64,000 bases of DNA from Penicillus capitatus (taxonomy: Eukaryota; Plantae; Chlorophyta). Positions 1 to 62,863 of this stretch are shown in pieces (the stretch's first letter is position 1; each line of letters begins with the position of its first letter). Both the position numbers and the translations under genes were made by a program. The stretch is from positions 736,292-800,291 of the forward strand of contig OZ287707.1 in the NCBI GenBank assembly GCA_965649825.1, in the 5' to 3' direction. Below the pieces are notes generated by a model, which was given only the letters and a program-made list of their open reading frames with translations, was not told the DNA's origin and made no database searches.

Positions 1-1794
1 GATGCACATACGACACCACAGTCACAGGAGATAAGAGGTTGCAATGGTAGATTAAAGATGAATGACTGGAAGATCACCGGCAGAGGCATAACGGACAACT
101 CCACGAGAGTAAATCCACCTGATCGATCGGAGACGGATCTCCTACAGAGAGACAATGAGCGGAACACACCTATCGATAGCATCCATAGCCAGAGAGGCCA
201 ATCGTATTCGATCGAGAGTCTTTCGAAGATGCTCACAGCGATGAGCAACACGAGACGCAACGTCAGAGAGCGAAGGTTGTTGGATGGGACATCGCTGGGG
301 CAGGGCAATCTCTCCACCCTCACGCATCTGCAACGATACAGTCGACGTTCTTTATCCGTTGGTGGAGAAGAATCCGAACCTGTTTCAGATGGACGCCAAA
401 GGAATAACGGCGTGGACGCACTGAACGATAAAGGAAAGCATAGGGAGCAAGGCATGGATATCGAAGAACAAAGCAAAGAGAGTACCAAGAGTTCCCATAA
501 CCAATGTCGCTGTCAAAGGGGTTTCTGTTGCTCGATACACCGATGCCTAAATATCTGTCCCACTCTGAATACGGAAAGGCTTGCACTTACAAGCTGATGT
601 CACAGAGAACCGTTTTCTCCTAAAACCTTAGCAAACGACTGGCATCACATAACATGATGAACACTGTCGTCGACATGACGCACATAGAACAGAACGAAAC
701 AGTACGACCTGCACAGTTCCATTTCAGCCGAATGAAGGCGGAAGAAAAGGACGTGTCAACATCGATGGCTTATACCTATCCATTTCATCGATCCTATCGA
801 ACACAGTTTGTCTAGAGTGTGCCCACGAAACGATGCCGATGAATGCCGTTGCTAAGAGGCTATACAGAATGATGCAGACGACAAGGCAGACAACGATTGC
901 TATGGGCAGATTTCTAGATGGATTCTGTGCATCTTCAGCGACACTTGCGAGGGAGTCAAATCCGAGGTAGGCATAGTAGAGAAGAGAGACTCCACGACAT
1001 ATCGTCGTCACCTTGGCGTCCTTCGGAAAGAAAAGCATGTAGTTTTGGACGTCCACATTGGGAATGGCGGCCACAAAGATGAGACGATGACCGTTGTTAT
1101 ACTGATTGCTATGGTGATGCCAGTTACCGTAAAGATGCTCGAACGCCATATGCCAGCAGAAGGGTCGACATCGCTGTGAATGCAGCTCTGAGGTCATCGA
1201 TCGCCACTTCGTCCGTATGATTGAATCAGATGACCAGAGTTTCGTGATCAATGCCTAAGGACGTCGAGATATAACCAGTGAATCCCTTCATCATTGCTCC
1301 ATGAAAGACGACGTATGCAAACAGAAAACTGCTGGCGACTGACCTAAAACGCGGCACCATCATGTGTGTATTGAGGGAGGTCGAAACCAGCCAGGGAATT
1401 CGCCGAACACAAGATCGATGTACATACAGCACGAACCAGCGATCGGCACATCTGCTGCAAATTGTGCATAAACGAGAGAGCAGAAGAGGGCGGCGATGCC
1501 AGCCAATCCATAAGAGAGGATGATGGCAGGTTCTGTCTTCACATGCCACCTCTCATGTCACGACGAAAAGGCCAGAGCCGATCACGGATCCCAATCCAAA
1601 CATGACTTAGGTCGGCATCCAATACGCAACGAACGGTCGGCGTTCGAGACGTCCATAGGGCGACGTCTTACCACATCCAATGGACCGAGTAATCGTTTGA
1701 GCTTCGTCGATAGTGAGGCTTTGGCAACCATGTCATCGACGGAGGCACAGCGAAAAGCTTTATCGCGAAAAGTCGCCCAGAAATTTGAAATCAT
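1..1794 (-). pseudogene. Decayed cationic amino acid transporter (APC/CAT family); runs off the window start
   Basis: Fragments in the correct order: KLKRLLGPLDV|MFGLGSVIGSGLFVVT, PAIILSYGLAGIAALFCSLVYAQFAADVP, YYAYLGFDSLASVAEDAQNPSRNLPIAI. They are broken by in-frame TGA at 1553-1555 and 1226-1228 plus several frameshifts. GT-AG introns are still recognisable. Confidence 0.8.
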
Positions 1795-2161
1795 CGTGTC
1801 GGGTTGCCACGGGGAGGATCAAATCGGCGACGCCTGAGGTGCCGTGCGGACGAAGTCGGTCAAGAAATCGACCTTCTCGGAGGCAATTTCGATGCGTTTC
1901 TTGTGTCTTGTATACTTTGTCGTGCGATTGGGACCCTTTGGAATAAATGGATCTTCGTATGCTTCGACTGTATTTTCGTCTAACATACGCGACTTGTAAG
2001 GACATCACTCGTCGTAGTCCTATAACAAACAGCGCTATCCTTGCGCTTGCGGCGATGACGCGACGGATGAGGCCGAGCTGACGTGCGACTATTGCCATCA
2101 AAGCTGCACTCAACGTCCTGTCGAGGTCTGCGGATCGCTGCGATCCCTGATGTCAGAGTCA

Positions 2162-2250
2162 CATCAGGTGAGTCAACTTACACCGCGAACGTGAAGCGGA
2201 AATTCGCATGGTCGCGATAGATGTCCGACCATGGACCGTGAGTTGCGCCG
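2162..2250 (+). repeat. 89-nt structured direct repeat, copy 1 (starts CATCAG|GTGAGT)
   Basis: Ungapped alignment to 2568-2656 gives 71/89 identity by manual count. Three hairpins can form in both copies. Confidence 0.85.
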
Positions 2251-2257
2251 CTGACGG

Positions 2258-2440
2258 GAATCGTCTGTCCGGGCCAGCGATCGACTCGTCTGCCAACGCA
2301 GCGACCGAATCGTCTGTCCGAGTCAGCGATCGTTTCGTCTGCTCAACGCCACGACCGAATCGTCTGCCGGATCAGCGATCGTTTCGTCTGCAAATGCAGC
2401 GACCGAATCGTCTGTCCGAGTCAGCGATTTCCTCGTCCGC
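2258..2440 (+). repeat. Imperfect tandem array, ~3.5 units of 48-50 bp (GAATCGTCTGTCCGAGTCAGCGATCGTTTCGTCTGC...)
   Basis: Units of 49, 50 and 48 nt plus a partial unit, each with an internal TCGTCTG sub-repeat. Unit lengths do not preserve a reading frame. Confidence 0.9.
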
Positions 2441-2461
2441 GGGCGCACGATGTACTACCGC

Positions 2462-2521
2462 AGAATACTGAGCTTCGCCTGTGGCGAGCCGTATTCTTAA
2501 TTTTTGACGGCGCTTTGCGCC
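2462..2521 (+). other. Stem-loop / AATTTTTGA / stem-loop module
   Basis: AGAATAC...GTATTCT stem with an inner GC(T)TCGCC/GGCGAGC stem (2462-2497), then AATTTTTGA (2499-2507), then GGCGC-TTT-GCGCC (2509-2521). Function unknown. Confidence 0.5.
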
Positions 2522-2567
2522 TTACCCCTAACCCTGTCAATCTAAAGCGGAAGTTTGGCAACTGTCC

Positions 2568-2656
2568 CATCAGGTGAGTCACCTTACACGGCGAACATGA
2601 AGAGGAAGTTCACGTCGTCGCCATAAGTGTTCTGCTGCGGACCGTGAGTTGCGCGG
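2568..2656 (+). repeat. 89-nt structured direct repeat, copy 2 (starts CATCAG|GTGAGT)
   Basis: Paralog of 2162-2250. Followed by a pyrimidine tract, TTTTTGAC (2691-2698) and CAG (2707-2709), i.e. a plausible intron 3' end. Confidence 0.85.
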
Positions 2657-2767
2657 ACTGTTCTGGCGGCGTGCAATCTTGTGTCTTCTGTTTTTGACCT
2701 ACGAATCAGAAAGCATACAACAGCACCATTCCAAATACTGTCATTGTGAAGAAAAAAGACTGCGGAT

Positions 2768-5700
2768 ATGTCTTTCAGGGGCGGCAGATATCAAAGACAG
2801 ATCGTTCTGTCGGTAGAACGATCCGGCACAACAAGGGAGGCACCGCCATCGACAGATCAAAGTCGATTGACACATCCGTCCAGAGATCAAAGCCGACAAG
2901 CGCCTCCGTCGACAGATCGAAGCCGATTGGCACATCCGTCGACAGATCGAAGCCGATTGGCACATCCGTCCAGAGATCAAAGTCGATTGACACATCCGTC
3001 GACAGATCGAAGCCGATTGGCACATCCGTCCAGAGATCGAAGTCGAAGTCGAAGTCGAAGTCGAAGTCGAGATGCTCCATTGTTAAATTACAGATCCGGA
3101 GAAGAAGAGGCTTCAAACGGAGAAGAAGGAGTGATCCGGCTTGTCTGCTGGAAAGGAAAAACTCCAATCGAGTCCAAAGCCGTAGCTTCGGTCTGCAGGG
3201 GTATTAACTATGCCGCTTCTCGTTGTTGTTTCGGCAAGTCTGGCAACGTTTCGTAAGTTCATCAAGCATGTACTGGTATTGCTGACATAGTGCTTCTAGG
3301 GACTCTTACGATCTCTTCCCTGGCATTGAAATGTTTGGCTTCGAACGCCGATTCTTATCGGAGAACGAGATCGTCTACAAGCACACAGCGACGCGTGACG
3401 TGTTTACGTTCTTGTCCGAAGATTTTGCCTCGGACCATAAAGCGGTGGAGTTTCAGCCAATTACTCATGGTGATCTGTGGAGGTTCCTCCCGGAGCCTCT
3501 CAAGGTATGCTCTTCTATTTCCCTCGTCTTTTCAAGCACTGTCTGTGACATAGACGGGCCATGTGCTCTTCGAACGATCGCAAGTGAAGAACCTCGCTGC
3601 GATCATCATACGTTGCTTGACGGAGTGCTACGAGGAACTTCATTCGACGTATCTATTGTGAGCTATAACATGCGAGAACGCGAGCCTATTTGCCGAATGA
3701 GATAGACCTTAATAAAGAACATTCGTGTAAGGCTCAACTAAAAAATTCAGTGTGCTTTTAAATCTCTGGCAACAAACTTCCTCAGGCATCGCCAACTTGC
3801 TTCGACACACATCACCGCTACGCGCCGCCAAGCCATTTTCGACAATAGCTGCTAGAAGTGGAGGCGGGAAAACGCTTCGTGTAGGACCTGAGGCAGCTGC
3901 AGCGGGTAAGATTTTGAAACGAGGGAGACGAACGGTGATTTCGTCCCGTGGTTCAGACTCGCGCTGCCTCGTGCGAAAAGAGCGACTTCAAGAATGCCGT
4001 TCTTCGTATAGACGTGACGCTTGGTCGACGTCATGCCGACAGCGCCGTCCATGAAACCCTCACCGCATTCCACAGACGCCTCGCGTGTGTACTCTTTCTG
4101 TAGCATATGGCCACGACAGTGCCCTATGGTCGATCCACATGCTCGGACAAGTGACCAGCAGCGATGACACGATTGCATAACAGTACTTGACGCAGCGCAT
4201 CACCCAGTGTTCGCCTGACGAATACCGTCTTGGAGCATTGGATGCTTTGTTGAAGTGATTGCCCAGGATGAAGCGTGATTCGAAGTTGCATCCTGTTCTT
4301 GCTGGATTGATGGATCGATTCGCTGACTACGCACAGAAGAACGCAGGCACAGCGAAGGATGCAGACGCATTATATCGACTCGAAGAAACATGTACAGCAG
4401 TAAGCGATCTTGCAAAGCATGAAAGATATTAAAAGGTAAATCGTTAAGGGTTCTGAAGGCCCGTGTAGACATGCATGCCTCAGATGTCCTTCACATGTAT
4501 GCGGCAATGTTAAGCGTTACGGCCAATGTTTGTTCAGGTCGACCTTATTTCATGAATGGCTTGCTGACAACCTGTTCAGTGTTGGGTTTGTTCGTCGCAC
4601 ATTGAAGATATTCCTGTTTTGCACGAGCCAATTGTGTATGACCAGCTGGAAGAAAACTCAGTATCGCATTTGTTCTACCAAAGCCATTGAGTCGTTATAA
4701 TGCTGTGAAGTAGCTGACTCTGGATAGCTATCTCAAACTCATGTGCCTTCTTCGTCCGAAGGAAATGAGACACAGGCTGTGTTTTGCTGCAGTGGCTCGG
4801 AAATGAACGATGATCATTGCAATATCTGCCTGCAGGCACGGAAGATCAAGGAAGTCATTCTTGATGGCGGAATGATCTCTATTGATGCAACTGAAAAGCT
4901 GTCTTTTCACGGATGCTTTCAATTTCTGAAGATTCTTGTCCGTCTGCCGTGCCGCTCGTGCCTTCTTCACGCATTGCAATGCAAAGCACCTATGGAAAAA
5001 GAGATCCTCATACATACGCAGCATAATGTCATCATCAGAAACGTACCTACGATTCTCCTGTCACACTGCTGGGACGCTACGATCCTGAACGGTCACAGTA
5101 ATCCGTCGATCTTCTGATCGTATTCTCGAAGTCGTTGGGCAAAAGTCACTGGTAACGATCATATCTTAATGTGGTTGTTCTGCTTTTACTTGCTACACTG
5201 ACGAGACAACATTTGAGTGAGATGCCAGCACAGGGAAAATTTCTGCAAGCTTTTTAGGACAAGACCATGTCGTAAACAGACAACCTGCCACAAGGGTCGT
5301 CAACTTTCTAAAAGCACACGGACAAAATGCGCCCGAGAATGAGAAGACATTGAAAACATGGTCCTTAACTTTACCTTACAGGCTACCTTTTCTGAATGTG
5401 GTCCTTGGACGTTGAATTGGAAAGAGAAAATCAATATGTCCTCCACAGCACAAGTGTCAAGAATGCAACGTAAAAGAGACGTAGTAGACGTCCTTGAACG
5501 CATGCAAAACTGTCAGCTCGCTGAATCACAGAACAGCGATCTGCAACGTTCTCGCCTGATAGATTACTCCTCCCCGTGTCAAAGAAACGATCTCACCATG
5601 TAAACCAACAAGTTAAACTATTCGTTGGCCGATCGGTCACACTTTCTCACTCTTTCTACCTAATATCGTGCCGCGCATGCTCCTTATCTGCTGCTTATGT

Positions 5701-7900: not shown

Positions 7901-8908
7901 TGTGAATCCGTTGTGAAAAACGCAGCTATGAAGCAGCAATGACAGCTGTATTGCGAGTAACTGGGCGGAAAATAGCAGGTGCGAACACTGTGAGAAAAAG
8001 GCGCCATCTCATTCTGACAATACGATTTGTCAGCAAACCGCTCTGCGTCCCCTGTCTCGGCGCGAAGTTGCATTCAAGGTCGTGCATTTTTCAGTCAAGG
8101 CTTTAAGGGCAACGCTTTAGTAATTGCGACACATTTGGCACGTTTCTTAGTTTTTCGGTCGAAAAAGGGGAAGAAAGCTCCAAAAGAACTGCTTTTTGCG
8201 TCCCCCCATAGGCTCGAGCTTACAGCTGTCAGTCCCGTACGGTCACTCGGCAGTAGACTTTGCTGACGCATAGATTCCGACTCTTTGACGAAAGTGCCGA
8301 CCTACCGAGAAGTCGTAAAGGAGACAGCATTGGACACTCCGTGGGCAGCGTCGTTATTCAGTGAAGGAAGCGACGCATCGTTTTTGCCAAGAGAACCTTG
8401 CAAAAACGAACTTTGCGCGAGTGCACGCGTTCGTTGAACGTTCTCCGTTGCGGACAACGTCGTTCAGAACGGAACTGGGATACGGTGCCTAGTGTGTGGA
8501 TGCTGTATTTCCATTGATGACTCTCCGAGCCGGATACAGCGTGTTGAAGAATACTGAGCGTTCCGTAGGAGGTGGTGCACGTTGAGTTCACAAAAGCGTC
8601 GGCGAATATAGAGGACATACGCATGGAACGGGCGGGACGACGCGTTTGCCTTCGTATGGCAACAAATGCTTACGCTTCGGAGTCTCCGAATTCGGGAACG
8701 ACGTAACAAGCGGATGTGCAAGAGACATCATTGTCTAACTCATGGCTTCTGTCGGTCTTAAATTATCTCTTGTTCGTGTGCGCAAGGTGACGTGACTTGA
8801 TAGAGCCGGTGCAAATCGGACGTGTCTAGAGGAAGAAACGGTTGGTGCCGTGGAGGCTTGAAAATCAAGCGACGTTCATTCAGCACGTTTTAATTTGACG
8901 CATTCTTC

Positions 8909-9784
8909 ATGAAAGCAGTGGCTTGTTCTTCAGATGTTCCGCGTCGTGCGGCAGCGTACCGTACAGCCAATGTGGCAAAGGAACCTTTCAAGCAATCCAT
9001 GGAGCGCTGGTACTCGGACTACGCAAAAACGTACGACCGAGACGGTTACCATACGCGCATCGCCGAGCGCCTGATCGAGAAACTCGACGTTCGAGAAGGC
9101 GATCGAATCCTGGACATCGCCACCGGTACAGGCCTGGCAGGATTCGCTGCACTGCGGAAGGCGGGGCAGAGCGGATCGCTGGTGGCCGTCGACATCTCGC
9201 CGGAGATGCTGGAAGTGGCAGCGCGCGATGCCGAATCGGAGGGGTTGCAGAATGCGGAGTTCGTCCTCTGCGACGCGCAGAACCTCGATCTGCCGGAGGA
9301 GAGCTTCGACGATCTGATCTGTTCCTCGGCGCTGGTCCTTTTTCCAGATGCCGAGTGGACCTTGCGGTACTGGAAGGGATTCTTGGTATCCGGTGGCCGT
9401 TTGGCTGTCCACTGTTTTCACGAAAAGTCCTACGTCGCCGGCAAACTGATACAGACGGTGGCGGCAGAGCGCGGAGTGGAGCTCGTTTTCAGCGAACCCA
9501 CAGGTACACCTGAGAGATGCCGCAGATTGCTGGAGAATGCTGGCTACGATTCCATCGCGATCGACGAGGTTACAGGAGGAGAATACCGAACGTCGGAGAA
9601 AGTGATGTCGCTGTGGGATAGAATGATCCACCACCCAATGGTGCAGCTGCCGACTCGGATTCCGGACGCTGCCGACCTCAATGCCATGAGAGAGCGCTAC
9701 CGCGAAATGGTGAAGGGCCTCGAAACGGAGGAGGGTATCTGGGACGAGGACACGATCATGTACGTCTACGCCCGCAAGCCGTGA
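8909..9784 (+). CDS. Class I SAM-dependent methyltransferase (UbiE/Methyltransf_25-31-like), intronless, bacterial/cyanobacterial type
   Basis: Uninterrupted 291-aa ORF with motif I ILDIATGTG, VAVDISPEML, CDAQNLDLPEESFDDLICSSAL and FLVSGGRL. The C-terminal PTGTPERCRRLLENAGY and GIWDEDT...ARK recall a cyanobacterial family. Confidence 0.92.
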   Translation: MKAVACSSDVPRRAAAYRTANVAKEPFKQSMERWYSDYAKTYDRDGYHTRIAERLIEKLDVREGDRILDIATGTGLAGFAALRKAGQSGSLVAVDISPEMLEVAARDAESEGLQNAEFVLCDAQNLDLPEESFDDLICSSALVLFPDAEWTLRYWKGFLVSGGRLAVHCFHEKSYVAGKLIQTVAAERGVELVFSEPTGTPERCRRLLENAGYDSIAIDEVTGGEYRTSEKVMSLWDRMIHHPMVQLPTRIPDAADLNAMRERYREMVKGLETEEGIWDEDTIMYVYARKP

Positions 9785-10062
9785 CGAGCACTATCGTAAC
9801 GAACGGCATTACACAAAGCTGTTTTTGCACCTCATGTTGCTAGAACCGCACGGGATGCGCGACGTGATAGCCGTCGGCATCCATCAAAGGACATAGTAGA
9901 AACAGGGCAGACTGGCACGGTGTCATGCTTCGGCTTGATGGGACACACCGAGCACAGCGCCGACAAAGTACATGCAGAACAAAAATGAAGAGTCAGTGCG
10001 AGTTAGCACTTTCAAAACTGGTTAACGAAGCAACAGCCGCAGACGTCTCCAGGAAAGCAGCC

Positions 10063-10777
10063 TCATGCGTTCACCTTCTTCTTCAGGTAGGGATCGCCGC
10101 CCGCCAGATCGAACTGGGGCGTGTACGTGTGTCTCCCAAACTCCTTCTCTGCCTCTCTGGCCATCTCGTTCAGGTGCGCCGAAGAGAACTTTCTCCACCT
10201 GCCACGCATGACTCAGCCGACGCGATCGACCGACGCACGTCGCCTCACCACTTGTCTCGTCTGAACAGCGTCTCGGTGGCCTTGTGGGTCGGCGACACAT
10301 CGCTCTCCTGCACGAACGCACATTCAGGCGATCCCTCGAAAGGAGCTGTGTGCCGCACGGTGTCGTCCGAGTCGCCGGACTCGATGTGCGAGGCGTCTCT
10401 CCCGTCCGAGAACGCTTCCTGCAGCTTCTGGATTACAAAAACGCTGGGCGCCGACTTGCGCGACAGCTCAGGGCGCCCTAGACAGCTCCATTCGCTCTCC
10501 GCCGCCCGCGCGCTGCCGCACCTGTGGGCAGAGCCATGGTCCTTCCCTCGACGGACTTTCGCTTGGCTATCTGCGCACCCTTCTCCAACGACCTAACGAC
10601 ACTACAGCCTCAGCGCCCCGCGCCAGCCGAAGACGGAGGCGCGGTACATGATTTCTTCGCGCAGTTCCTCCGGCAACCCTACAGGCCACACGCGTCGAGC
10701 GGGCGAATTGGCGACCGCGGCGTACCCAGCTGCGGCTTCATTGGTTCAGAATCCCATCCTGGCAACAAACTTCCCAT
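10063..10777 (-). CDS. Small green-lineage conserved protein of unknown function (MGSL..GWDS / WW..S.A.LNE / Y.PQF family), multi-exon
   Basis: Hand-spliced: MGSLLPGWDSEPMKPQL...RSLEKG...KWWRKFSSAHLNEMARE...YTPQFDLAGGDPYLKKKVNA*. This parallels a plant family (MGSLMAGWDS...GWWTRSNWAFLNEPP...YAAQF). Internal exons approximate. Confidence 0.7.
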
Positions 10778-10909
10778 CGTCGAACAGAATGTGTTGTATG
10801 GAACAAGACAAACGTAGATAGAAACACAACAATGCGGAACACGTATTCAGTCAAACGCAGAATAGATGTGTTGCATTGTAGGCTCTATGTTTTATTAATT
10901 TCCTTCTTG

Positions 10910-38908: not shown

Positions 38909-41900
38909 TTACGCAGATCGTATCAACTCCAAGATTCCTGGGTACTCATCTTCGAAGCAGCTCTCGACATGCGATACAAGTGAATGGGCCTCGTCTCTTT
39001 TGTATGCGCCCAAAGATTCTGACGTCTTTGCGTGGAGGACGATGTTCACTTCGTCGTTGTGTATAGTTTCTTCTATTGTGACAGGAAATTCGAACAGAAG
39101 CTCGACAAGGTGTCGTGTGCTTTCGGGATATTCCCCTGTGATGACTTTCGAAATCAGGTCTCGAAATGTATCGCGTATGATGTCATCGTCTTCCGTTTTC
39201 GCGTCCATATCGCCGTTGTCGTTTGCCTCTCCAAAGGCACCGCTAGAAGAGGACGGTCCTGCGATCGAGGCGTGACGGTTGATATCTTCTTCCGTTCGGT
39301 AGGCACCTCGGCGAGTATCTTGCCAAACATCATTGGATGCCAAGTAACCGTCCGGTATTTGACGTGCTGCCGTTTGAACGGTCTCCTTGGCGTCCTTCGC
39401 CGCTCGGCCGACATCTTCGCTCTCGTCTTCCGTTCCTCTTTCGAGCATCGGCATCAGAAAGGCGGCGCAACTAGGCTCTGCCTCCACGATCTTCCCGACG
39501 ACCTCCATCGCTTTCTCTCGCACATCTTCATGTACATTTCCGCATGCCAATTCGATCAAAGGCATGACATCACTTAGGAGCGACGGGTTCGCCATCAAGA
39601 CGCGGCCGATCATGAGTGTTGCTACGACTCGCACGCCTTCTTCCGGATCTGAGATACCGCGTTCCAATAACGGCAGAAATTCATTCAAGAGCTTAGGCGA
39701 CCGGGACAAAAATGCCTCAGACGACAGCATTGCCATGATTCTCACTCCCTGATCCGCATCCACACATCCTCTCTTGAGAATGGACATGAGTTTCACTGCA
39801 TAACGGGGCGCCTTCTTGGCGATATTTCCAACGACCATGATGATTCTCTGCCTAACATCTTCGTCTAGATCCGTGTATCTGACGTCAAGCATAGAAAAGA
39901 GCTCGGCAGAGAGCTTTGGAACGTGTGTCATAAGATCTTGTATCATGTCTAAGGCTTGTTTGCGGATGCGAGGGCTTCGATCTGACAATTTGGCACGTGC
40001 CATTCCTACCAAGGTAGTCAAGTGACGTGGCGCGTGTTTTGCAAGTTTTACAACATCTTCAAATATATGCGTGCCGATGAGATCTTCAGTTCTTTGGGTC
40101 TCTGTGAACGTGTCAAGAACCGTAGAGAATCCGGATATCAGATCGCGATATTGATCGAGCTTGTCCATGACGAGGTTCCAAAGTCGAGTGCTCGGTTCCA
40201 ATTGCATAAGCACATGCACCAATGCATCCATCACTTGCGAAGCCGTCCCACCAATCCAATCATCATCGACAGACGAATCCACCAATCCAGCTGCCCACTC
40301 GTCAAGAATTTGAAGCTTCAAGAAAAAGTGTTGCACGCCGAGGATCTCGACCGGCGATCGATCGATCGACGAGAACACTTCGCGAACGACAACTGTACCG
40401 CGCCAGTCTGCAAGGGCCTGTGCCGTGAGAGCAACGATCATCCGGCTCTTTCTCTCATATTTTCTCTTTGTTAAGAAATCCGCCGATTCCTGTCGCTCTC
40501 TCGAAGTTCCTTTTCTCAATCGATATGCGATATATCTTCCAGCAAAGTACTCTTGGAACGTCCTATTAGGAAAATAGTACTTGTCTTTTTCCATATCAAA
40601 AAACACGTATCCGCTGTCCCTTAGCATTCCCATGACCACCCCAGTTGATGCTTGCTCTTCGAAAAGGCTTCGATCGATCAGCCTCTGGTCCTTTTGGACG
40701 GCACGGAAGGCGATGACATCTATGCGTCGCAAAACATCTTCGCGCAAAACTCTATCCATGCGTGGCCGTCTTGAAAATCGAGACCACAGCATGTTAACAA
40801 TCTTCGTGTACAGTGAGAAGACGCTCTTTCTTCGCTTTTCGTGCACGAGTGTCTCTTCATTGTCTGCCCAGAAGAGAGATAGAATATAGGCCATCACTGG
40901 GATATGCATGAGCGTCCACAACTCGGGATTCGATTTGAAGTACTTCATGAATTCGTTGAAGGAGCTGGTCGAGAGCTCACTGCTGGCAAATGTCTTCACC
41001 TGTTCATCATCCATACCCAGACACTCGACCACACGATCGGCAAAAAGCAGTTCCCCACGAAGACCGTAAGAGGCACTGAACAAGAGTATCTTGCACCGGC
41101 ATTCTTTGGCATGCGTTATGATTCCGCTGGCGAGTTCGTCAGCTTTGTCGATGCCATCGAGCACCAACAATGTCCGTTGTGAATTGAGGTTGTCGTGTAT
41201 TTGCGTGCGGAGCGATTGACTGATAGGGTCCCTGCGGTCTGAGTAACAGATATCTGCTATGGCTTCTTCCAGCGTCAACGAACCCCTTCCGCCTTCGTCC
41301 ACACTGCACAGCTTTCTCACGGGAAGAACGTACATGGTCTTGAATTCTCTCATAAACCCGCCCTGTGTCCAATTGTATGCCAACATTCGACTCAAGCACG
41401 TCTTTCCGGAGCCAGAATTTCCGTAGATGAGCACTTTCCTTATCACGGCAGCTCTCGGTCCCGATTCGCATGCCTCTCTCAGTCTAAAAAGGTACTCCGG
41501 GTTTATGCGTTTTCTTGTATCGTGAGCCCAAGTGAACTGGGCATTTACTGGATCGTATCCAGATCCTGCTTCCATACTCCACTCGACCAATTTTTCATTA
41601 TCGGGATTGTCATAGGCAACAATAGAGAACTCCATATCCTTCACATGCCTGCACGCACCGTTGTTGACAAGAGACGGCGCCTTTAATGACCAATGCATCA
41701 GCGAATGGATATGACAAGGAGGATCGATGATACCTTGGTAAAGTCATACTGATTGTAGGCTTTGACGAGATCCCGCAAACCGCGATAAACTTCCTCAAGG
41801 GGAATGTACCCTATCATCTCTCCAAGCGTGATTGAGAGTTCCTTGTTCCAATAACTTCGTGGTCTGCTCTCGCGTTGGATTTTGAGTTTCTCTTCAAACG

Positions 41901-43275
41901 TGCCAAATCGCAGCCATCTATCCAGAGTCTTGTCGGACGCCGCAGTGCGGTTGCCATGCAGATGACGAAGTGCTGCTTCCGTCTCTTCTCTTAGCACGCA
42001 GCGCACATGGACTCGGTAGATGGATTTGAACAAGAGGTCAAAGAGATCTTCATCTTCCGCCCATGATTCATCGGTCGCACGTGTCACACATAGATCCGTT
42101 AGCATTTTTGCCGCTCTCTTTCGGACATCCGTGGCATGTGCCCCAATGGATAACTGCCGGAGTTCATAAATGATACCGAATCTCAGTGCCTTTTGCTCTT
42201 CCTCTCCCTTCAGGTCGTGCTGAATCTCGATTATGGCGTTACACCAATCGGTGAAACTCTCCATATCCTCAGCTCTTTGCAGTGCCTTCATTCCGGCGTC
42301 GGCCAGTTTCTGAATCAGATAGAGCCAGTGTTCTTCTTGGATGCCAGCAGTGCTTCCCGCTTTTATTTTTTCGACTGCATTCTTCGGTGTCAGTTCACGG
42401 AGGTCCATGGAGGACATCGATGGCATCAGCTTCTGAATCATCTGGTGCATTCCAAACGCCTCTGCGATGCTTTGTCGTAACGATCGCCTGCGAAGAGAGG
42501 AATCATCCGTCGCTGTCAGACGTTCAATGCTCTTTTCGATAATCATGAAATGAAAATGCACAGGGTAGTACTTAAACGAGCTCCCCAGTTCTCGACGTTT
42601 TTCTACGACCAGCTGACGGAATTCCTGTTTCTTAACGCGAGACAATCGAGGCTGCGAGAACGTTTCTAGATATCCGAGAATAAACCTCAGAGAAAAGAAA
42701 GTCGATTTATGATCTTTGAAACTGGATCTGTTGAGAATTGGCCTTCGCGCCAGACTTGAGAGAAGCTTTTCGGTTAAAGACAGCAATTGGGTCGTATCTT
42801 CGAACACAACGGGAGGCATATTCAAAAGGGTCTCGTACAGAGCCTTCCCTGTATTTGTCTCTACAAACTGGTCGGGCTTGAAACGGCTACTGATGTTGAC
42901 CAGCAAGGTTCTAAGCAGCTCTTCGTCTTCTCGTGTCTTCGGGACAATTCTTGAAATTTCAGCGTAGTCAAGGACAGCTTCCGGATGGAGGGATTTTTCA
43001 GTTTTCTCGCCGTAGAGACGCAGCCACTTGTACAAGGCGGTTCTCTGGTGCTCGGAACTTTCTCGGTTGTACACAGCAACCAGTGACGACGTTTTTCTGA
43101 TGTTGTTGTCAATAGACAGCTCACGCAGCAATCGACGCTCATCAGTTTCGCGGAGCGAAGAAACAACCCTGTCCTCGGGAGGCTTCGAAACGACCATGCC
43201 GCCAGGAGGCTTCGAAAAGGGAGATGGTCCTTGAGGGCGAGGCCGTTCGCTTTGGTCAACGATTTCGGATGCCAT
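38909..43275 (-). CDS. STAND/NACHT NTPase with large helical N-terminal domain and C-terminal HEAT repeats (NLR-like), ~1437 aa, 2 exons
   Basis: The 525-aa and 929-aa ORFs join in frame across a 53-nt GT-AG intron (41681-41733). Walker A GNSGSGKT, Walker B LLVLDGID, HIPVM, WHD-like TFQEYFAG, and about 6 HEAT-like repeats (D..EDVR..A). Confidence 0.88.
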
Positions 43276-62025: not shown

Positions 62026-62863
62026 ATGGCATCGAACCGTCTTCCCGTCGTCCCCACCGTCACTGTTCTCGCACAAATCAAGACGCGCCTCGTCGCTGCT
62101 ACAAAGGGCCATGCACTTCTCAAGAAGAAAGCAGACGCCCTTACTGTCCGTTTTCGCGCGATCCTAAAAGAAATCATCGCCGCCAAAGAAACGATGGGCG
62201 AATCTCTGCGCGACTCCTTTTTCTCCCTCATCGAAGCCAAATACGCAGCAGGCGATAAAATGAAACATACAGTGCTGGATAATGTCGACCAGGCCAACAT
62301 TCGCGTGTCTGCCCATACAGAAAACGTGGCAGGGGTCAAGATTCCCAAGTTCGCACAATCTGAAGGCAGTGCCGACTCGAAGATGGAACTGACTGGACTG
62401 GGATCCGGAGGACAGCAGATTCAGAGCTGCCGAAAGGCCTTTTCGAGTACCATCGAGCTCCTGATTGAACTGGCCAATCTCCAAACCGCCTTCATGACAT
62501 TGGACGAAGCACTCAAAGTCACCAACAGACGTGTGAACGCCCTCGAGAACGTTGTGAAACCGCGTCTGGAAAACACCATCTCCTATATCAAGGCACGCTT
62601 TCTTGCTCTTGTTTAACCACAATGACACGTGTGTAGGGCGAGTTGGACGAATTGGAGAGAGAAGAGTTTTTTCGACTGAAGAAAGTGCAGAACAAGAAAG
62701 AACGGGACTTGAAGAAAAAGATACAGGCACAGAAAGCGGTAGGCTCTACGGTTGCCCATTTGCTGGTTGGGATATGGTTGGTGCTTCTTAGGCGGAGCTT
62801 GCACATGCCGCACAGGTTGAGACGATGATTGCGACGGGCCAAGACGAGGATGTGGTTTTCTGA
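62026..62863 (+). CDS. VHA-D: V-type H+-ATPase subunit D
   Basis: VVPTVTVL...ATKGHALLKKKADAL, ENVAGVKIP, LANLQTAF.TLDEALKVTNRRVNALE, YIK|GELDELEREEFFRLKK. The intron after YIK is GC-AG. Confidence 0.97.

What the first reader, a model, noticed from the sequence alone, without database searches (positions are those of the whole stretch)
2162..2709. Two 89-nt paralogous elements with covarying hairpins, each beginning at a perfect splice donor
Seen: 2162-2250 and 2568-2656 align without gaps (71/89). Both start CATCAG|GTGAGT, a much stronger donor than most introns here. Both can fold three hairpins: (1) GTGAG-TCAN-CTTAC over the donor; (2) a long stem closed by CGCGA/TCGCG in copy 1 and GGCGA/TCGCC in copy 2 (a compensatory C-G to G-C swap) with a 7-nt purine loop; (3) GTCC/GGAC versus GTTC/GGAC around a largely different 6-nt loop. 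Each is followed by TTTTTGAC (2501-2508; 2691-2698). Inference: structure rather than sequence is conserved. Options are paralogous structured 5'-UTR introns of the downstream transposase-like gene (introner-like or regulatory), spliced-leader-like small RNAs (donor in a hairpin, stem-loops and a U-rich site is SL-RNA grammar, and SL trans-splicing is not established in green algae), or transposon subterminal repeats.
Basis: partly seen in the sequence, partly recalled or inferred. Interest (0 to 1): 0.72.

Follow-up and report, generated by a model that had tools for sequence, protein, structure and literature searches.

The report
Split U4-like snRNA gene, green alga
The two 89-nt repeats belong to a U4 spliceosomal-RNA-like gene of an unnamed green alga, whose U4 core and Sm-site tail are separated by a conserved, hairpin-rich insertion that begins with a splice-donor-like sequence; copy 1 is the start of that insertion and copy 2 is a decaying partial duplicate, not a spliced-leader RNA.

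Summary
Both copies carry CAG|GTGAGT. The "covarying hairpins" rest on one compensatory pair, which is no better than chance.

Rfam finds a U4 snRNA-like core at 2037-2167 that ends where copy 1's donor begins. At 2463-2521 lies a canonical snRNA 3' domain: stem-loop, AAUUUUUGA, terminal hairpin. Copy 1 is therefore the 5' part of a ~300-nt insertion that splits a U4-like gene.

A second contig of the same assembly (L007) carries the whole unit again, and a haplotig (L009) carries it too. A related genome lacks it at the syntenic site (L008).

Between the paralogs, an upstream block, the U4 core, copy 1 and the 3' domain diverge 5-11%. Spacers, flanks and copy 2 diverge 19-35%. This mosaic suggests a constrained RNA gene and an unconstrained copy 2.

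The L007 paralog has lost the GT of the "perfect donor". Splicing at that site is therefore unproven and not conserved.

SL RNA, transposon and "5'-UTR intron of a transposase gene" readings are not supported. No RNA data were available. Interest is moderate.

The parts
1988..2015 (+). Conserved upstream block (CGCGACTTGTAAGGACATCACTCGTCGT), 22-49 nt before the U4-like 5' end; candidate snRNA-type promoter element
   Evidence: Between the paralogues (window vs L007) it diverges 7%, against 23% and 35% plus gaps in its immediate flanks (Fisher P 0.04; 0.004 with gaps counted). It is unique in the window. The function is inferred.
2037..2167 (+). U4 snRNA-like core. 5' AUCCUUGCGC (U6 stem-II strand); K-turn 5' stem-loop 2057-2089; deviant stem-I strand 2090-2105; hairpin A 2132-2146; hairpin B 2147-2167
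   Evidence: Rfam RF00015: 36.3 bits, E 3e-6, below the gathering score of 46. The paralogue scores 38.8 bits. Paralogue divergence is 10.7%; changes in stems are wobble-compatible or compensatory (A.A to U.G).
2158..2248 (+). Repeat copy 1 (c1). Contains the last 10 nt of hairpin B; the donor-like CAG|GTGAGT (GT at 2168-2169); hairpin 1 2168-2181; hairpin 2 2184-2216; hairpin 3 2223-2236; and a second GTGAGT at 2238-2243
   Evidence: It is the best-conserved part of the unit between paralogues (5% divergence). The only indel deletes the GT in L007.
2249..2462 (+). Rest of the insertion. A conserved 44 nt (2249-2292, contains GCTGACGG); a 49-bp tandem repeat, about 3.5 units (2269-2440), single-copy in L007; and a fast-evolving 22 nt ending in CAG (2461-2463)
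   Evidence: family D2; 2441-2462 diverges 19%. Three of the four haplotype differences inside the gene (2037-2521) fall at 2441-2460.
2463..2521 (+). snRNA 3' domain: stem-loop SL-C 2463-2496, Sm site AAUUUUUGA 2499-2507, terminal hairpin GGCGC-UUU-GCGCC 2509-2521
   Evidence: The fold gives a stem-loop, a single-stranded Sm site and a hairpin, z -3.1. AATTTTTGR has only 2 hits in the window. Paralogue divergence is 6.8%, with G-C to G-U changes in the stems. Rfam alone cannot assign it.
2522..2547 (+). Conserved 26 nt after the terminal hairpin (TTACCCCTAACCCTGTCAATCTAAAG); candidate 3'-end formation signal
   Evidence: 7.7% divergence between paralogues, against 33% in the next 16 nt. The function is inferred.
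2564..2654 (+). Repeat copy 2 (c2): partial duplicate of the hairpin B 3' arm plus c1, 43 nt after the U4-like gene
   Evidence: The two c2 copies (window vs L007) diverge 21% with 11 gap columns, against 5.6% for the c1 pair (P 0.003). The L007 c2 has lost the 5' arm of hairpin 2 and has CAG|TTGAGT.
2655..2709 (+). c2 tail with TTTTTGAC (2691-2698) and CAG (2707-2709). With c2 it forms a possible 136-nt GT-AG intron (2574-2709) in front of the ORFan gene (ATG 2768)
   Evidence: The tail is shared with the L007 c2 at 73%. TTGAC lies 12 nt before the AG, matching the nTGAC branch motif of three mapped introns. G2696 is A in the haplotig. Splicing is not shown.

Best explanation
Copy 1 is not a free-standing element. 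It is the 5' part of a ~300-nt insertion that splits a U4-snRNA-derived, Sm-class small-RNA gene (about 2037-2521, + strand). On one side is the U4 core: the U6 stem-II strand, the K-turn 5' stem-loop, a central region and two hairpins. On the other side is a canonical 3' domain: stem-loop, AAUUUUUGA Sm site and terminal hairpin.

The gene has its own conserved upstream block and a conserved 26-nt downstream block. It exists in two paralogous loci of this green alga, plus a haplotig.

Copy 2 is a 91-nt partial duplicate lying 43 nt after the gene. It is evolving like unconstrained DNA.

How it most likely works (inferred, not shown): the unit is transcribed as an snRNA-type transcript. The K-turn and the AUCCUUGCGC 5' end give it U4-like protein and U6 contacts, and the Sm site nucleates an Sm ring.

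The fate of the insertion is unresolved. My split is:
- about 40%: the conserved hairpin domain (hairpin B, c1 and the next 45 nt) is kept in the mature RNA as a lineage-specific expansion. GUGAGU would then be a pairing partner of the internal ACUUAC rather than a used donor.
- about 25%: part or all of the insertion is removed as a spliceosomal intron, with the donor at 2168 or at the invariant second GUGAGU at 2238, and the acceptor CAG at 2461-2463.
- the remainder: the gene is no longer functional.
For: U4 identity. Rfam RF00015 matches 2037-2171 over the full model (36.3 bits, E 3e-6), with the Sm site deleted from the alignment. It also matches the paralogue at L007 6568-6438, independently found (38.8 bits).

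3' domain. 2455-2530 folds as stem-loop, single-stranded AAUUUUUGA and hairpin, z -3.1. AATTTTTGR has 2 hits in 128 kb of searched strand, so one within 500 nt downstream on the same strand is expected by chance only about 0.7% of the time.

Whole-unit paralogue. Window 1397-2293 matches L007 at 89% and 2405-2560 at 90%. The order is the same: block, core, c1, spacer, 3' domain, c2. The haplotig L009 is identical across the block, core, c1, 3' domain and c2.

Mosaic conservation between paralogues of the same age. Upstream block 7%, core 10.7%, c1 5%, 3' domain 6.8% and post-gene block 7.7%. Against these, flanks are 23-35%, the pre-SL-C spacer 19%, c2 21% and the c2 tail 27%. Unit vs c2 plus tail: P 8e-5. 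c1 pair vs c2 pair: P 0.003.

Stem-preserving substitutions. Of 57 local base pairs, 55 hold in the window and 56 in L007. Random relocation of the 31 substitutions gives 49.9 +/- 1.9 (P 0.0004). The L007 unit folds with z -4.0.

Decay of c2. The L007 c2 lacks the 5' arm of hairpin 2.
Against: - Both U4 hits are below Rfam's gathering score (46).
- The stem-I strand (UUGCCAUCAAAGCU) deviates from the consensus (UUGCUAGUUGAAAACU) in both paralogues. Pairing with a canonical U6 AGC region would be poor (established U4/U6 pairing).
- The 3' domain cannot be assigned to U4 by Rfam on its own.
- The stem-preservation test weakens with stricter helix sets: P 0.015 without the c1 helices and 0.16 for hairpins that are perfect in the window alone. 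The global MFE test is not significant.
- Patchy gene conversion could mimic part of the mosaic.
- The unit is missing at the syntenic site of the related genome (L008).
- No other homologue was found anywhere.
- No RNA evidence of any kind was available.
- Against the intron variant: L007 lacks the GT; no nTGAC branch motif lies before the CAG at 2461-2463; that region is the fastest-evolving; 226-296 nt is five to six times the length of the three mapped introns (44-49 nt); and c1 is better conserved than the core.
- Against the retention variant: a 147-nt tandem-repeat expansion sits inside the RNA in the window copy.
Confidence: 0.55

Rival explanations
1. Dead U4 pseudogenes. A U4 gene copy was disrupted by an insertion and then carried along in a segmental duplication. 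The paralogues look constrained only because of patchy gene conversion or chance. c1 and c2 are junk left by local duplication.
For: Sub-threshold Rfam scores and a deviant U6 stem-I strand. The Sm site is separated from the core. There is a minisatellite expansion inside the unit. The GT is lost in L007, and a 2.3-kb insertion sits right after the L007 unit. The unit is absent from the syntenic site in L008. The region is full of recent rearrangements: a chimeric permease gene, a 2-kb duplication and a retrotransposon. The most conservative helix test is not significant (P 0.16).
Against: Alternating conserved blocks (5-11%) and fast spacers (19-35%) on a scale of 20-130 nt are hard to obtain from gene conversion. 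A conserved block sits at a promoter-like position. 8 of the 9 substitutions that fall in stems preserve or restore pairing. The Sm site, K-turn and terminal hairpin are intact in both copies.
Confidence: 0.25
2. The two copies are the 5' ends of two structured introns in the 5' leader of the downstream gene (intron A 2168-2547, intron B 2574-2709). The U4-like sequence would merely serve as a first exon.
For: Both copies have CAG|GTGAGT. Intron B has TTGAC 12 nt before CAG, the same nTGAC-to-AG layout as the three mapped introns. Intron A would end at a pyrimidine-rich CTAAC...CTAAAG.
Against: The downstream ORF has no homologue and no domain, and a retrotransposon interrupts it in the haplotig. 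The L007 unit has no such gene after it, and both its donors are mutated. This reading leaves unexplained the conserved Sm-site domain, K-turn and upstream block. The window's junction with the ORFan (about 2700) is the edge of a recent segmental duplication.
Confidence: 0.08
3. The copies are spliced-leader-type RNAs that donate a leader ending in ...CAUCAG by trans-splicing.
For: A donor followed by hairpins and a U-rich site. Copy 1 is followed, 250 nt later, by a true Sm-site consensus.
Against: The 'exon' of copy 1 is a 131-nt U4 core. The donor is lost in both L007 copies. The U-rich site after copy 2 is not conserved (TTTTTAAC in L009, CTGTTGAC in L007) and has no flanking hairpins. There are only two loci and no tandem array. 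There were no further matches in JGI metagenomes, which include transcript-sized contigs of relatives. Copy 2 evolves neutrally.
Confidence: 0.02
4. The copies are ends or parts of a mobile element that creates introns.
For: The U4 unit plus c2 is an indel relative to the related genome. The element starts with a donor, and introners are known in green algae such as Micromonas (PMC9860276, PMC3879977, abstracts only).
Against: There are no other copies in about 140 kb of this genome and its relative beyond the paralogous loci. Terminal inverted or direct repeats at the segment ends score no better than shuffles. The indel includes the promoter region and the whole gene. Homology of c1 and c2 includes 10 nt of the upstream 'exon' and stops after 91 nt.
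Confidence: 0.03

Closest known systems
U4 spliceosomal snRNA (Rfam RF00015)
   Same: The 5' AUCCUUGCGC strand complementary to the conserved U6 GCGCAAGGAU; a K-turn 5' stem-loop (GAUGA...UGA); a central single-stranded region; and, further on, a stem-loop, AAUUUUUGA and a short terminal hairpin in the canonical order.
   Different: The score is below the family threshold. The stem-I strand is deviant. About 300 nt (window) or about 150 nt (L007) are inserted between the core and the 3' stem-loop and Sm site. The unit spans 485 nt (window) or about 335 nt (L007), against roughly 140-160 nt for typical U4 (own knowledge).
Intron-containing snRNA genes of fungi (S. pombe U6; Rhodotorula hasegawae U2, U1, U5)
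   Same: An snRNA gene interrupted by a sequence with mRNA-type GU...AG ends (window copy). The precedent is reviewed in PMC5855946.
   Different: No case is reported for U4 in that review, and the phrase 'U4 snRNA intron' has no hit in the paper library. No case is reported outside fungi in what I read. Here the donor is absent in the paralogue, there is no branch motif, and the 'intron' 5' half is better conserved than the core. Splicing is untested.
Enlarged yeast snRNAs with dispensable internal domains (S. cerevisiae U1 and U2; own knowledge, not tested here)
   Same: The conserved functional ends are separated by lineage-specific, partly dispensable insertions that vary in length.
   Different: Those are U1 and U2, in fungi. 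Here the RNA is U4-like, in a green alga, and the insert carries two 5'-splice-site-like hexamers and a U1-5'-end-like ACUUAC.
Spliced-leader RNAs
   Same: Sm-class small-RNA grammar with a GU donor near hairpins.
   Different: There is no short leader, no array and no conserved donor, and the Sm site is 330 nt from the donor.

Membership tests
U4 snRNA (RF00015) | Covariance-model score at or above the curated gathering score (46 bits) | tested here: not met
   36.3 bits (window) and 38.8 bits (L007). The E-values (3e-6 to 2e-5) are significant, but both scores are below the threshold.
U4 snRNA (RF00015) | 5' strand able to form U4/U6 stem II | tested here: inconclusive
   AUCCUUGCGC is complementary to the universally conserved U6 GCGCAAGGAU (established knowledge). 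The following GCGGC would give one C.C mismatch with a canonical U6. The U6 of this organism was not available.
U4 snRNA (RF00015) | K-turn 5' stem-loop | tested here: met
   It aligns with high posterior probability. The A.A mismatch in the window is U.G in L007, with both sides changed.
U4 snRNA (RF00015) | Stem-I strand (UUGCUNNUU) pairing with the U6 AGC region | tested here: not met
   Both paralogues read UUGCCAUCA, with a 2-nt deletion relative to the consensus. Only about 3-4 canonical pairs with a standard U6 are possible.
U4 snRNA (RF00015) | 3' stem-loop directly followed by the Sm site and a terminal hairpin | tested here: inconclusive
   All three are present and conserved (2463-2521), but they lie 296 nt after the core. 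The model deletes the Sm site in the contiguous alignment. Rfam does not recognise the 3' domain alone.
Spliceosomal intron in an snRNA gene | GU...AG boundaries conserved among functional copies | tested here: not met
   The window and the haplotig have CAG|GUGAGU...CAG. L007 has CAG|GAGUCA, with the GT deleted. The second GUGAGU (2238) is invariant in all four copies.
Spliceosomal intron in an snRNA gene | Branch motif as in the genome's own introns (nUGAC 5-14 nt before the AG) | tested here: not met
   There is none within 40 nt upstream of 2463. That stretch is the fastest-evolving part.
Spliceosomal intron in an snRNA gene | Spliced product observed | not testable with these tools
   There was no access to RNA data. 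No transcript-derived protein or contig matched.
Spliced-leader RNA | Short capped leader exon, donor, and an Sm site within about 100-150 nt, conserved among copies | tested here: not met
   The exon of copy 1 is the U4 core. The donors and the U-rich site of copy 2 are not conserved.
Spliced-leader RNA | Leader found on many unrelated mRNAs | not testable with these tools
   No transcriptome of this organism was available.
Introner / intron-generating transposon | Many dispersed near-identical copies, with terminal repeats or target-site duplications | tested here: not met
   Copies occur only in the paralogous loci. End-repeat scores fall within the range of shuffles.

The most novel reading that the evidence does not exclude
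The window copy is a functional U4 snRNA gene whose transcript is spliced: GUGAGU at 2168 or 2238 joined to the CAG at 2461-2463. As far as the review I read and my library search show, that would be the first spliceosomal intron in a U4 gene and the first snRNA-gene intron outside fungi. Its 5' part would be structured and under selection, and would contain two 5'-splice-site sequences flanking a U1-5'-end mimic (ACUUAC).
Probability: 0.25. Interest if true: 0.7.

Novelty: new variant of a known kind. Interest (0 to 1): 0.5.

Why it matters
Sm-class snRNA genes are almost never interrupted. The few known introns (U6, U2, U5 and U1 of some fungi) were used as evidence for reverse splicing and for the RNA-based active site of the spliceosome. 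A U4-type gene in a green alga that is split by an intron-like, conserved, hairpin-rich insertion would be one of two things. It could extend that phenomenon to a new snRNA and a new kingdom. Or it could be the first enlarged or variant U4 carrying 5'-splice-site and U1 mimics. Either outcome can be tested directly with RNA from the organism.

Tried and rejected
1. Rfam at gathering thresholds over the whole window: nothing. Only the E-value scan revealed U4.
2. Rfam on the 3' domain alone: no snRNA match.
3. JGI metagenome scan for CAGGTGAGTCANCTTACAC: four chance hits in low-GC contigs, with no extension.
4. GTDB genomes and IMG/VR scans for the U4 5' stem-loop pattern and for the invariant block: no hits, or one chance hit in a high-GC phage contig.
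5. Homologues of the downstream ORFan: only itself. Pfam: none.
6. Coding potential of the repeat: stops in all frames and no 3-periodicity.
7. Extended homology between the copies beyond 91 nt: none.
8. Terminal inverted or direct repeats at the ends of the L007-specific segment: not above shuffles. The ATCAG...ATCAG 'target duplication' around copy 2 is not shared by L007.
9. Global MFE-based test of structure conservation: not significant.
10. Covariation on the four element copies: not significant for either fold.
11. HMMER search of 1.8 billion representative proteins with the spurious ORF 2208-2471: only the haplotig (P0125) and the L007 ORF (P0127).
12. U1 snRNA or telomerase-RNA readings (ACUUAC; CCCTAACCCT at 2526-2535): no Rfam U1 hit at E<=10, and the telomere-like motif is not conserved in L007.
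Full report
OBSERVATION

The repeat is real. 2158-2248 and 2564-2654 align without gaps at 80% over 91 nt. A word-7 blastn finds no third copy in the window. Both copies read CATCAG|GTGAGT, and CAGGTGAGT occurs nowhere else in the 64 kb. TTTTTGAC is at the stated positions.

Homology ends abruptly. The sequences before and after the 91 nt align no better than shuffles, and the shared TTTTTGAC is not part of a significant alignment. The repeat is non-coding: all frames have stops and the 18 differences show no codon periodicity.

The differences cluster in the middle: 15 of 42 positions there, against 3 of 33 at the 5' end and 0 of 16 at the 3' end.

The three hairpins can be drawn, but single-sequence folding gives different MFE structures for the two copies. 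Copy 2 is no more stable than shuffles.

ORGANISM AND NEIGHBOURS

The window is part of an 894-kb contig of ENA metagenome assembly ERZ25074695. Its V-ATPase subunit D is closest to Chlorophyta among named sequences (65-70%), with unnamed relatives at 85-90%.

The repeats lie in a divergent intergenic region. On one side is an amino-acid permease gene on the minus strand (Pfam). On the other is a three-exon ORF starting at 2768, which has no Pfam domain and no homologue but itself. It is not transposase-like.

Three introns that I could map are 47, 49 and 44 nt long. Their donors are GTAAGT, GTATGC and GCACGC. Each has an nTGAC motif 5-14 nt before the AG.

An E-value scan of Rfam finds a full-length U4 snRNA match at 2037-2171 (36.3 bits, E 3e-6, gathering score 46). 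The 5' end and the K-turn stem-loop align well. The Sm site is deleted from the alignment. The U4 core ends exactly where the 'donor' of copy 1 begins.

About 300 nt further on, 2463-2521 forms a stem-loop, a single-stranded AAUUUUUGA and a short GC hairpin. This is the standard 3' domain of an Sm-class snRNA (fold z -3.1). AATTTTTGR has only two hits in the window.

Between core and tail lie, in order:
- hairpin B;
- copy 1;
- 45 conserved nt, in which the repeat begins;
- a 49-bp tandem repeat of about 3.5 units;
- a short variable stretch ending in CAG.

PARALOGUES

The last protein search, run with the adjacent permease exon, led to two loci. L007 is another 635-kb contig of the same assembly. 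L008 is a syntenic locus in a different assembly, ERZ26696514.

L007 carries the whole unit on its minus strand. In order, it has:
- the same upstream region;
- a U4-like core (38.8 bits);
- copy 1;
- one 49-nt unit;
- SL-C;
- CAAUUUUUGAC;
- the terminal hairpin;
- a 2.3-kb insertion;
- a copy-2-like element with the same tail.

L008 lacks everything from 84 nt upstream of the U4 start through copy 2. The ends of that segment show no terminal repeats.

A search with the spurious ORF 2208-2471 found a 23x haplotig, L009. It is 96.9% identical overall and identical across the upstream block, core, c1, 3' domain and c2.

No homologue was found in JGI metagenomes, GTDB genomes or IMG/VR.

CONSERVATION PATTERN

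The two paralogous units are of one age, so their segments can be compared.

Slowly diverging segments:
- upstream block 1988-2015: 7%
- U4 core: 10.7%
- c1 after the donor: 5%
- 2249-2292: 11%
- 3' domain: 6.8%
- the 26 nt after it: 7.7%

Fast-diverging segments:
- the flanks of the upstream block: 23% and 35%, plus gaps
- 2441-2462: 19%
- 2548-2563: 33%
- c2: 21%, plus 11 gap columns
- c2 tail: 27%

The unit against c2 plus tail gives P 8e-5. The c1 pair against the c2 pair gives P 0.003.

Nine substitutions fall in 57 local base pairs (the Rfam 5' stem-loop, hairpins A and B, c1 hairpins 2 and 3, SL-C and the terminal hairpin). Eight of them keep or restore pairing. Random relocation of the 31 substitutions gives P 0.0004.

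This result weakens with stricter helix sets: 0.015 without the c1 helices, and 0.16 with only the hairpins that are perfect in the window. A global MFE test is not significant. I therefore call the structural signal suggestive and the mosaic of rates the stronger argument.

Copy 2 behaves as unconstrained DNA. The L007 c2 has lost the 5' arm of hairpin 2.

An alternative fold (CAACUUAC with the second GUGAGUUG, and CAUGGUCG with CGACCAUG) does as well.

IS THE DONOR A DONOR?

For:
- CAG|GUGAGU is a perfect consensus, and a 9-mer like this is rare.
- The insertion ends in CAG (window) or AAG (L007) just before SL-C.
- The spacer before that AG tolerates a 147-nt repeat expansion.
- Spliceosomal introns are documented in U6, U2, U5 and U1 genes of fungi (PMC5855946).

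Against:
- The only indel in the core plus c1 between the paralogues removes exactly the GT in L007.
- The L007 c2 has CAG|TTGAGT.
- No nTGAC branch motif precedes the CAG, and that stretch evolves fastest.
- The 'intron' would be 296 nt in a genome whose mapped introns are 44-49 nt.
- Its first 125 nt are at least as conserved as the U4 core.

A second GUGAGU (2238-2243, within CGTGAGTTGCGC) is invariant in all four copies. If it were the donor, both paralogues would yield mature RNAs of similar length, about 260-270 nt. The branch problem would remain.

ACUUAC (2176-2181) can pair with either GUGAGU.

I cannot decide among retention, splicing and decay without RNA data. My split is given under the best explanation.

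WHAT IT IS NOT

Spliced-leader RNA:
- The leader of copy 1 would be a U4 core.
- The donors and the U-rich site of copy 2 are not conserved (TTTTTAAC in L009, CTGTTGAC in L007).
- There is no array.

Introner or transposon:
- There are no dispersed copies in about 140 kb of this and the related genome.
- There are no end repeats.

5'-leader introns of the downstream gene:
- This is conceivable for copy 2 in the window only (2574-2709, with TTGAC 12 nt before CAG).
- The ORFan gene is absent from L007 and is broken by a retrotransposon in the haplotig.
- This reading ignores the snRNA features.

COMPARISON WITH KNOWN SYSTEMS, AND NOVELTY

The locus works like, and derives from, U4 snRNA. It fails two membership tests: the Rfam threshold and the stem-I strand. 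Its Sm domain is displaced.

The nearest precedents are the intron-containing snRNA genes of fungi and the enlarged yeast U1 and U2 (the latter from my own knowledge). The review I read lists no U4 case, and the phrase 'U4 snRNA intron' has no hit in the library.

I rate it a new variant of a known kind, of moderate interest, and dependent on RNA evidence.

VERDICT

- The best explanation is a U4-derived Sm-class RNA gene split by a conserved structured insertion, with copy 2 a dead duplicate (confidence 0.55).
- The main rival is a pair of pseudogenes (0.25).

Noticed in passing
L006 3141-5170 (1.5-3.5 kb upstream of the window start) and window 8826-10852: A 2-kb segmental duplication, 95% identical. 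It carries a SAM-dependent methyltransferase ORF (window 8909-9784) and brackets the permease, U4 and ORFan region.
   Followed up: partly
window 2839-3078; L009 3838-6369: The downstream ORFan gene contains 30-bp tandem repeats (10-aa repeats, then (TCGAAG)n). In the 23x haplotig, an LTR retrotransposon (ORF with RVT_1, Integrase_H2C2 and rve) replaces the sequence from about window 2909 onward.
   Followed up: partly
window 62593-62636: The V-ATPase subunit D gene has a 44-nt intron with a GC donor (AAG|GCACGC...AATGACACGTGTGTAG|GGC). It was mapped with a homologous protein.
   Followed up: partly
window -410..2293 (L006 6260-8963) vs L007 11778-9751 and 7209-6314: The window's amino-acid permease gene is a chimera of two members of a four-gene tandem permease cluster on L007. 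Its body resembles permease 3 (86%). Its 5' end plus the U4 unit resembles permease 2 (89%).
   Followed up: partly
window 1-2909 vs L009 788-3701: Haplotype divergence is very uneven: about 7% in 1-840, 0.8% in 840-2700 and 6% in 2710-2909. This suggests a recent conversion or sweep tract that includes the U4 unit.
   Followed up: no
L007 about 6200-3900 (minus strand): A 2.3-kb insertion lies between the U4 unit and copy 2. It has a 594-aa ORF on the opposite strand (L007 4091-5875) with no Pfam match. A 14-nt direct repeat, CCCCCGAGACAGGTA, was seen by eye near L007 6050 and 4380.
   Followed up: partly
window 2526-2535: CCCTAACCCT (telomere-repeat-like) lies directly after the terminal hairpin. 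It is not conserved in L007 (CTCCCAACCCT), so it is probably chance.
   Followed up: yes
window 38909-41698 (minus strand): A 929-aa single-exon ORF combines a NACHT NTPase domain with HEAT/PDS5-like repeats. It is immediately followed by a 525-aa ORF (41698-43275) that was not found in the exact-sequence look-up and was not analysed further.
   Followed up: no
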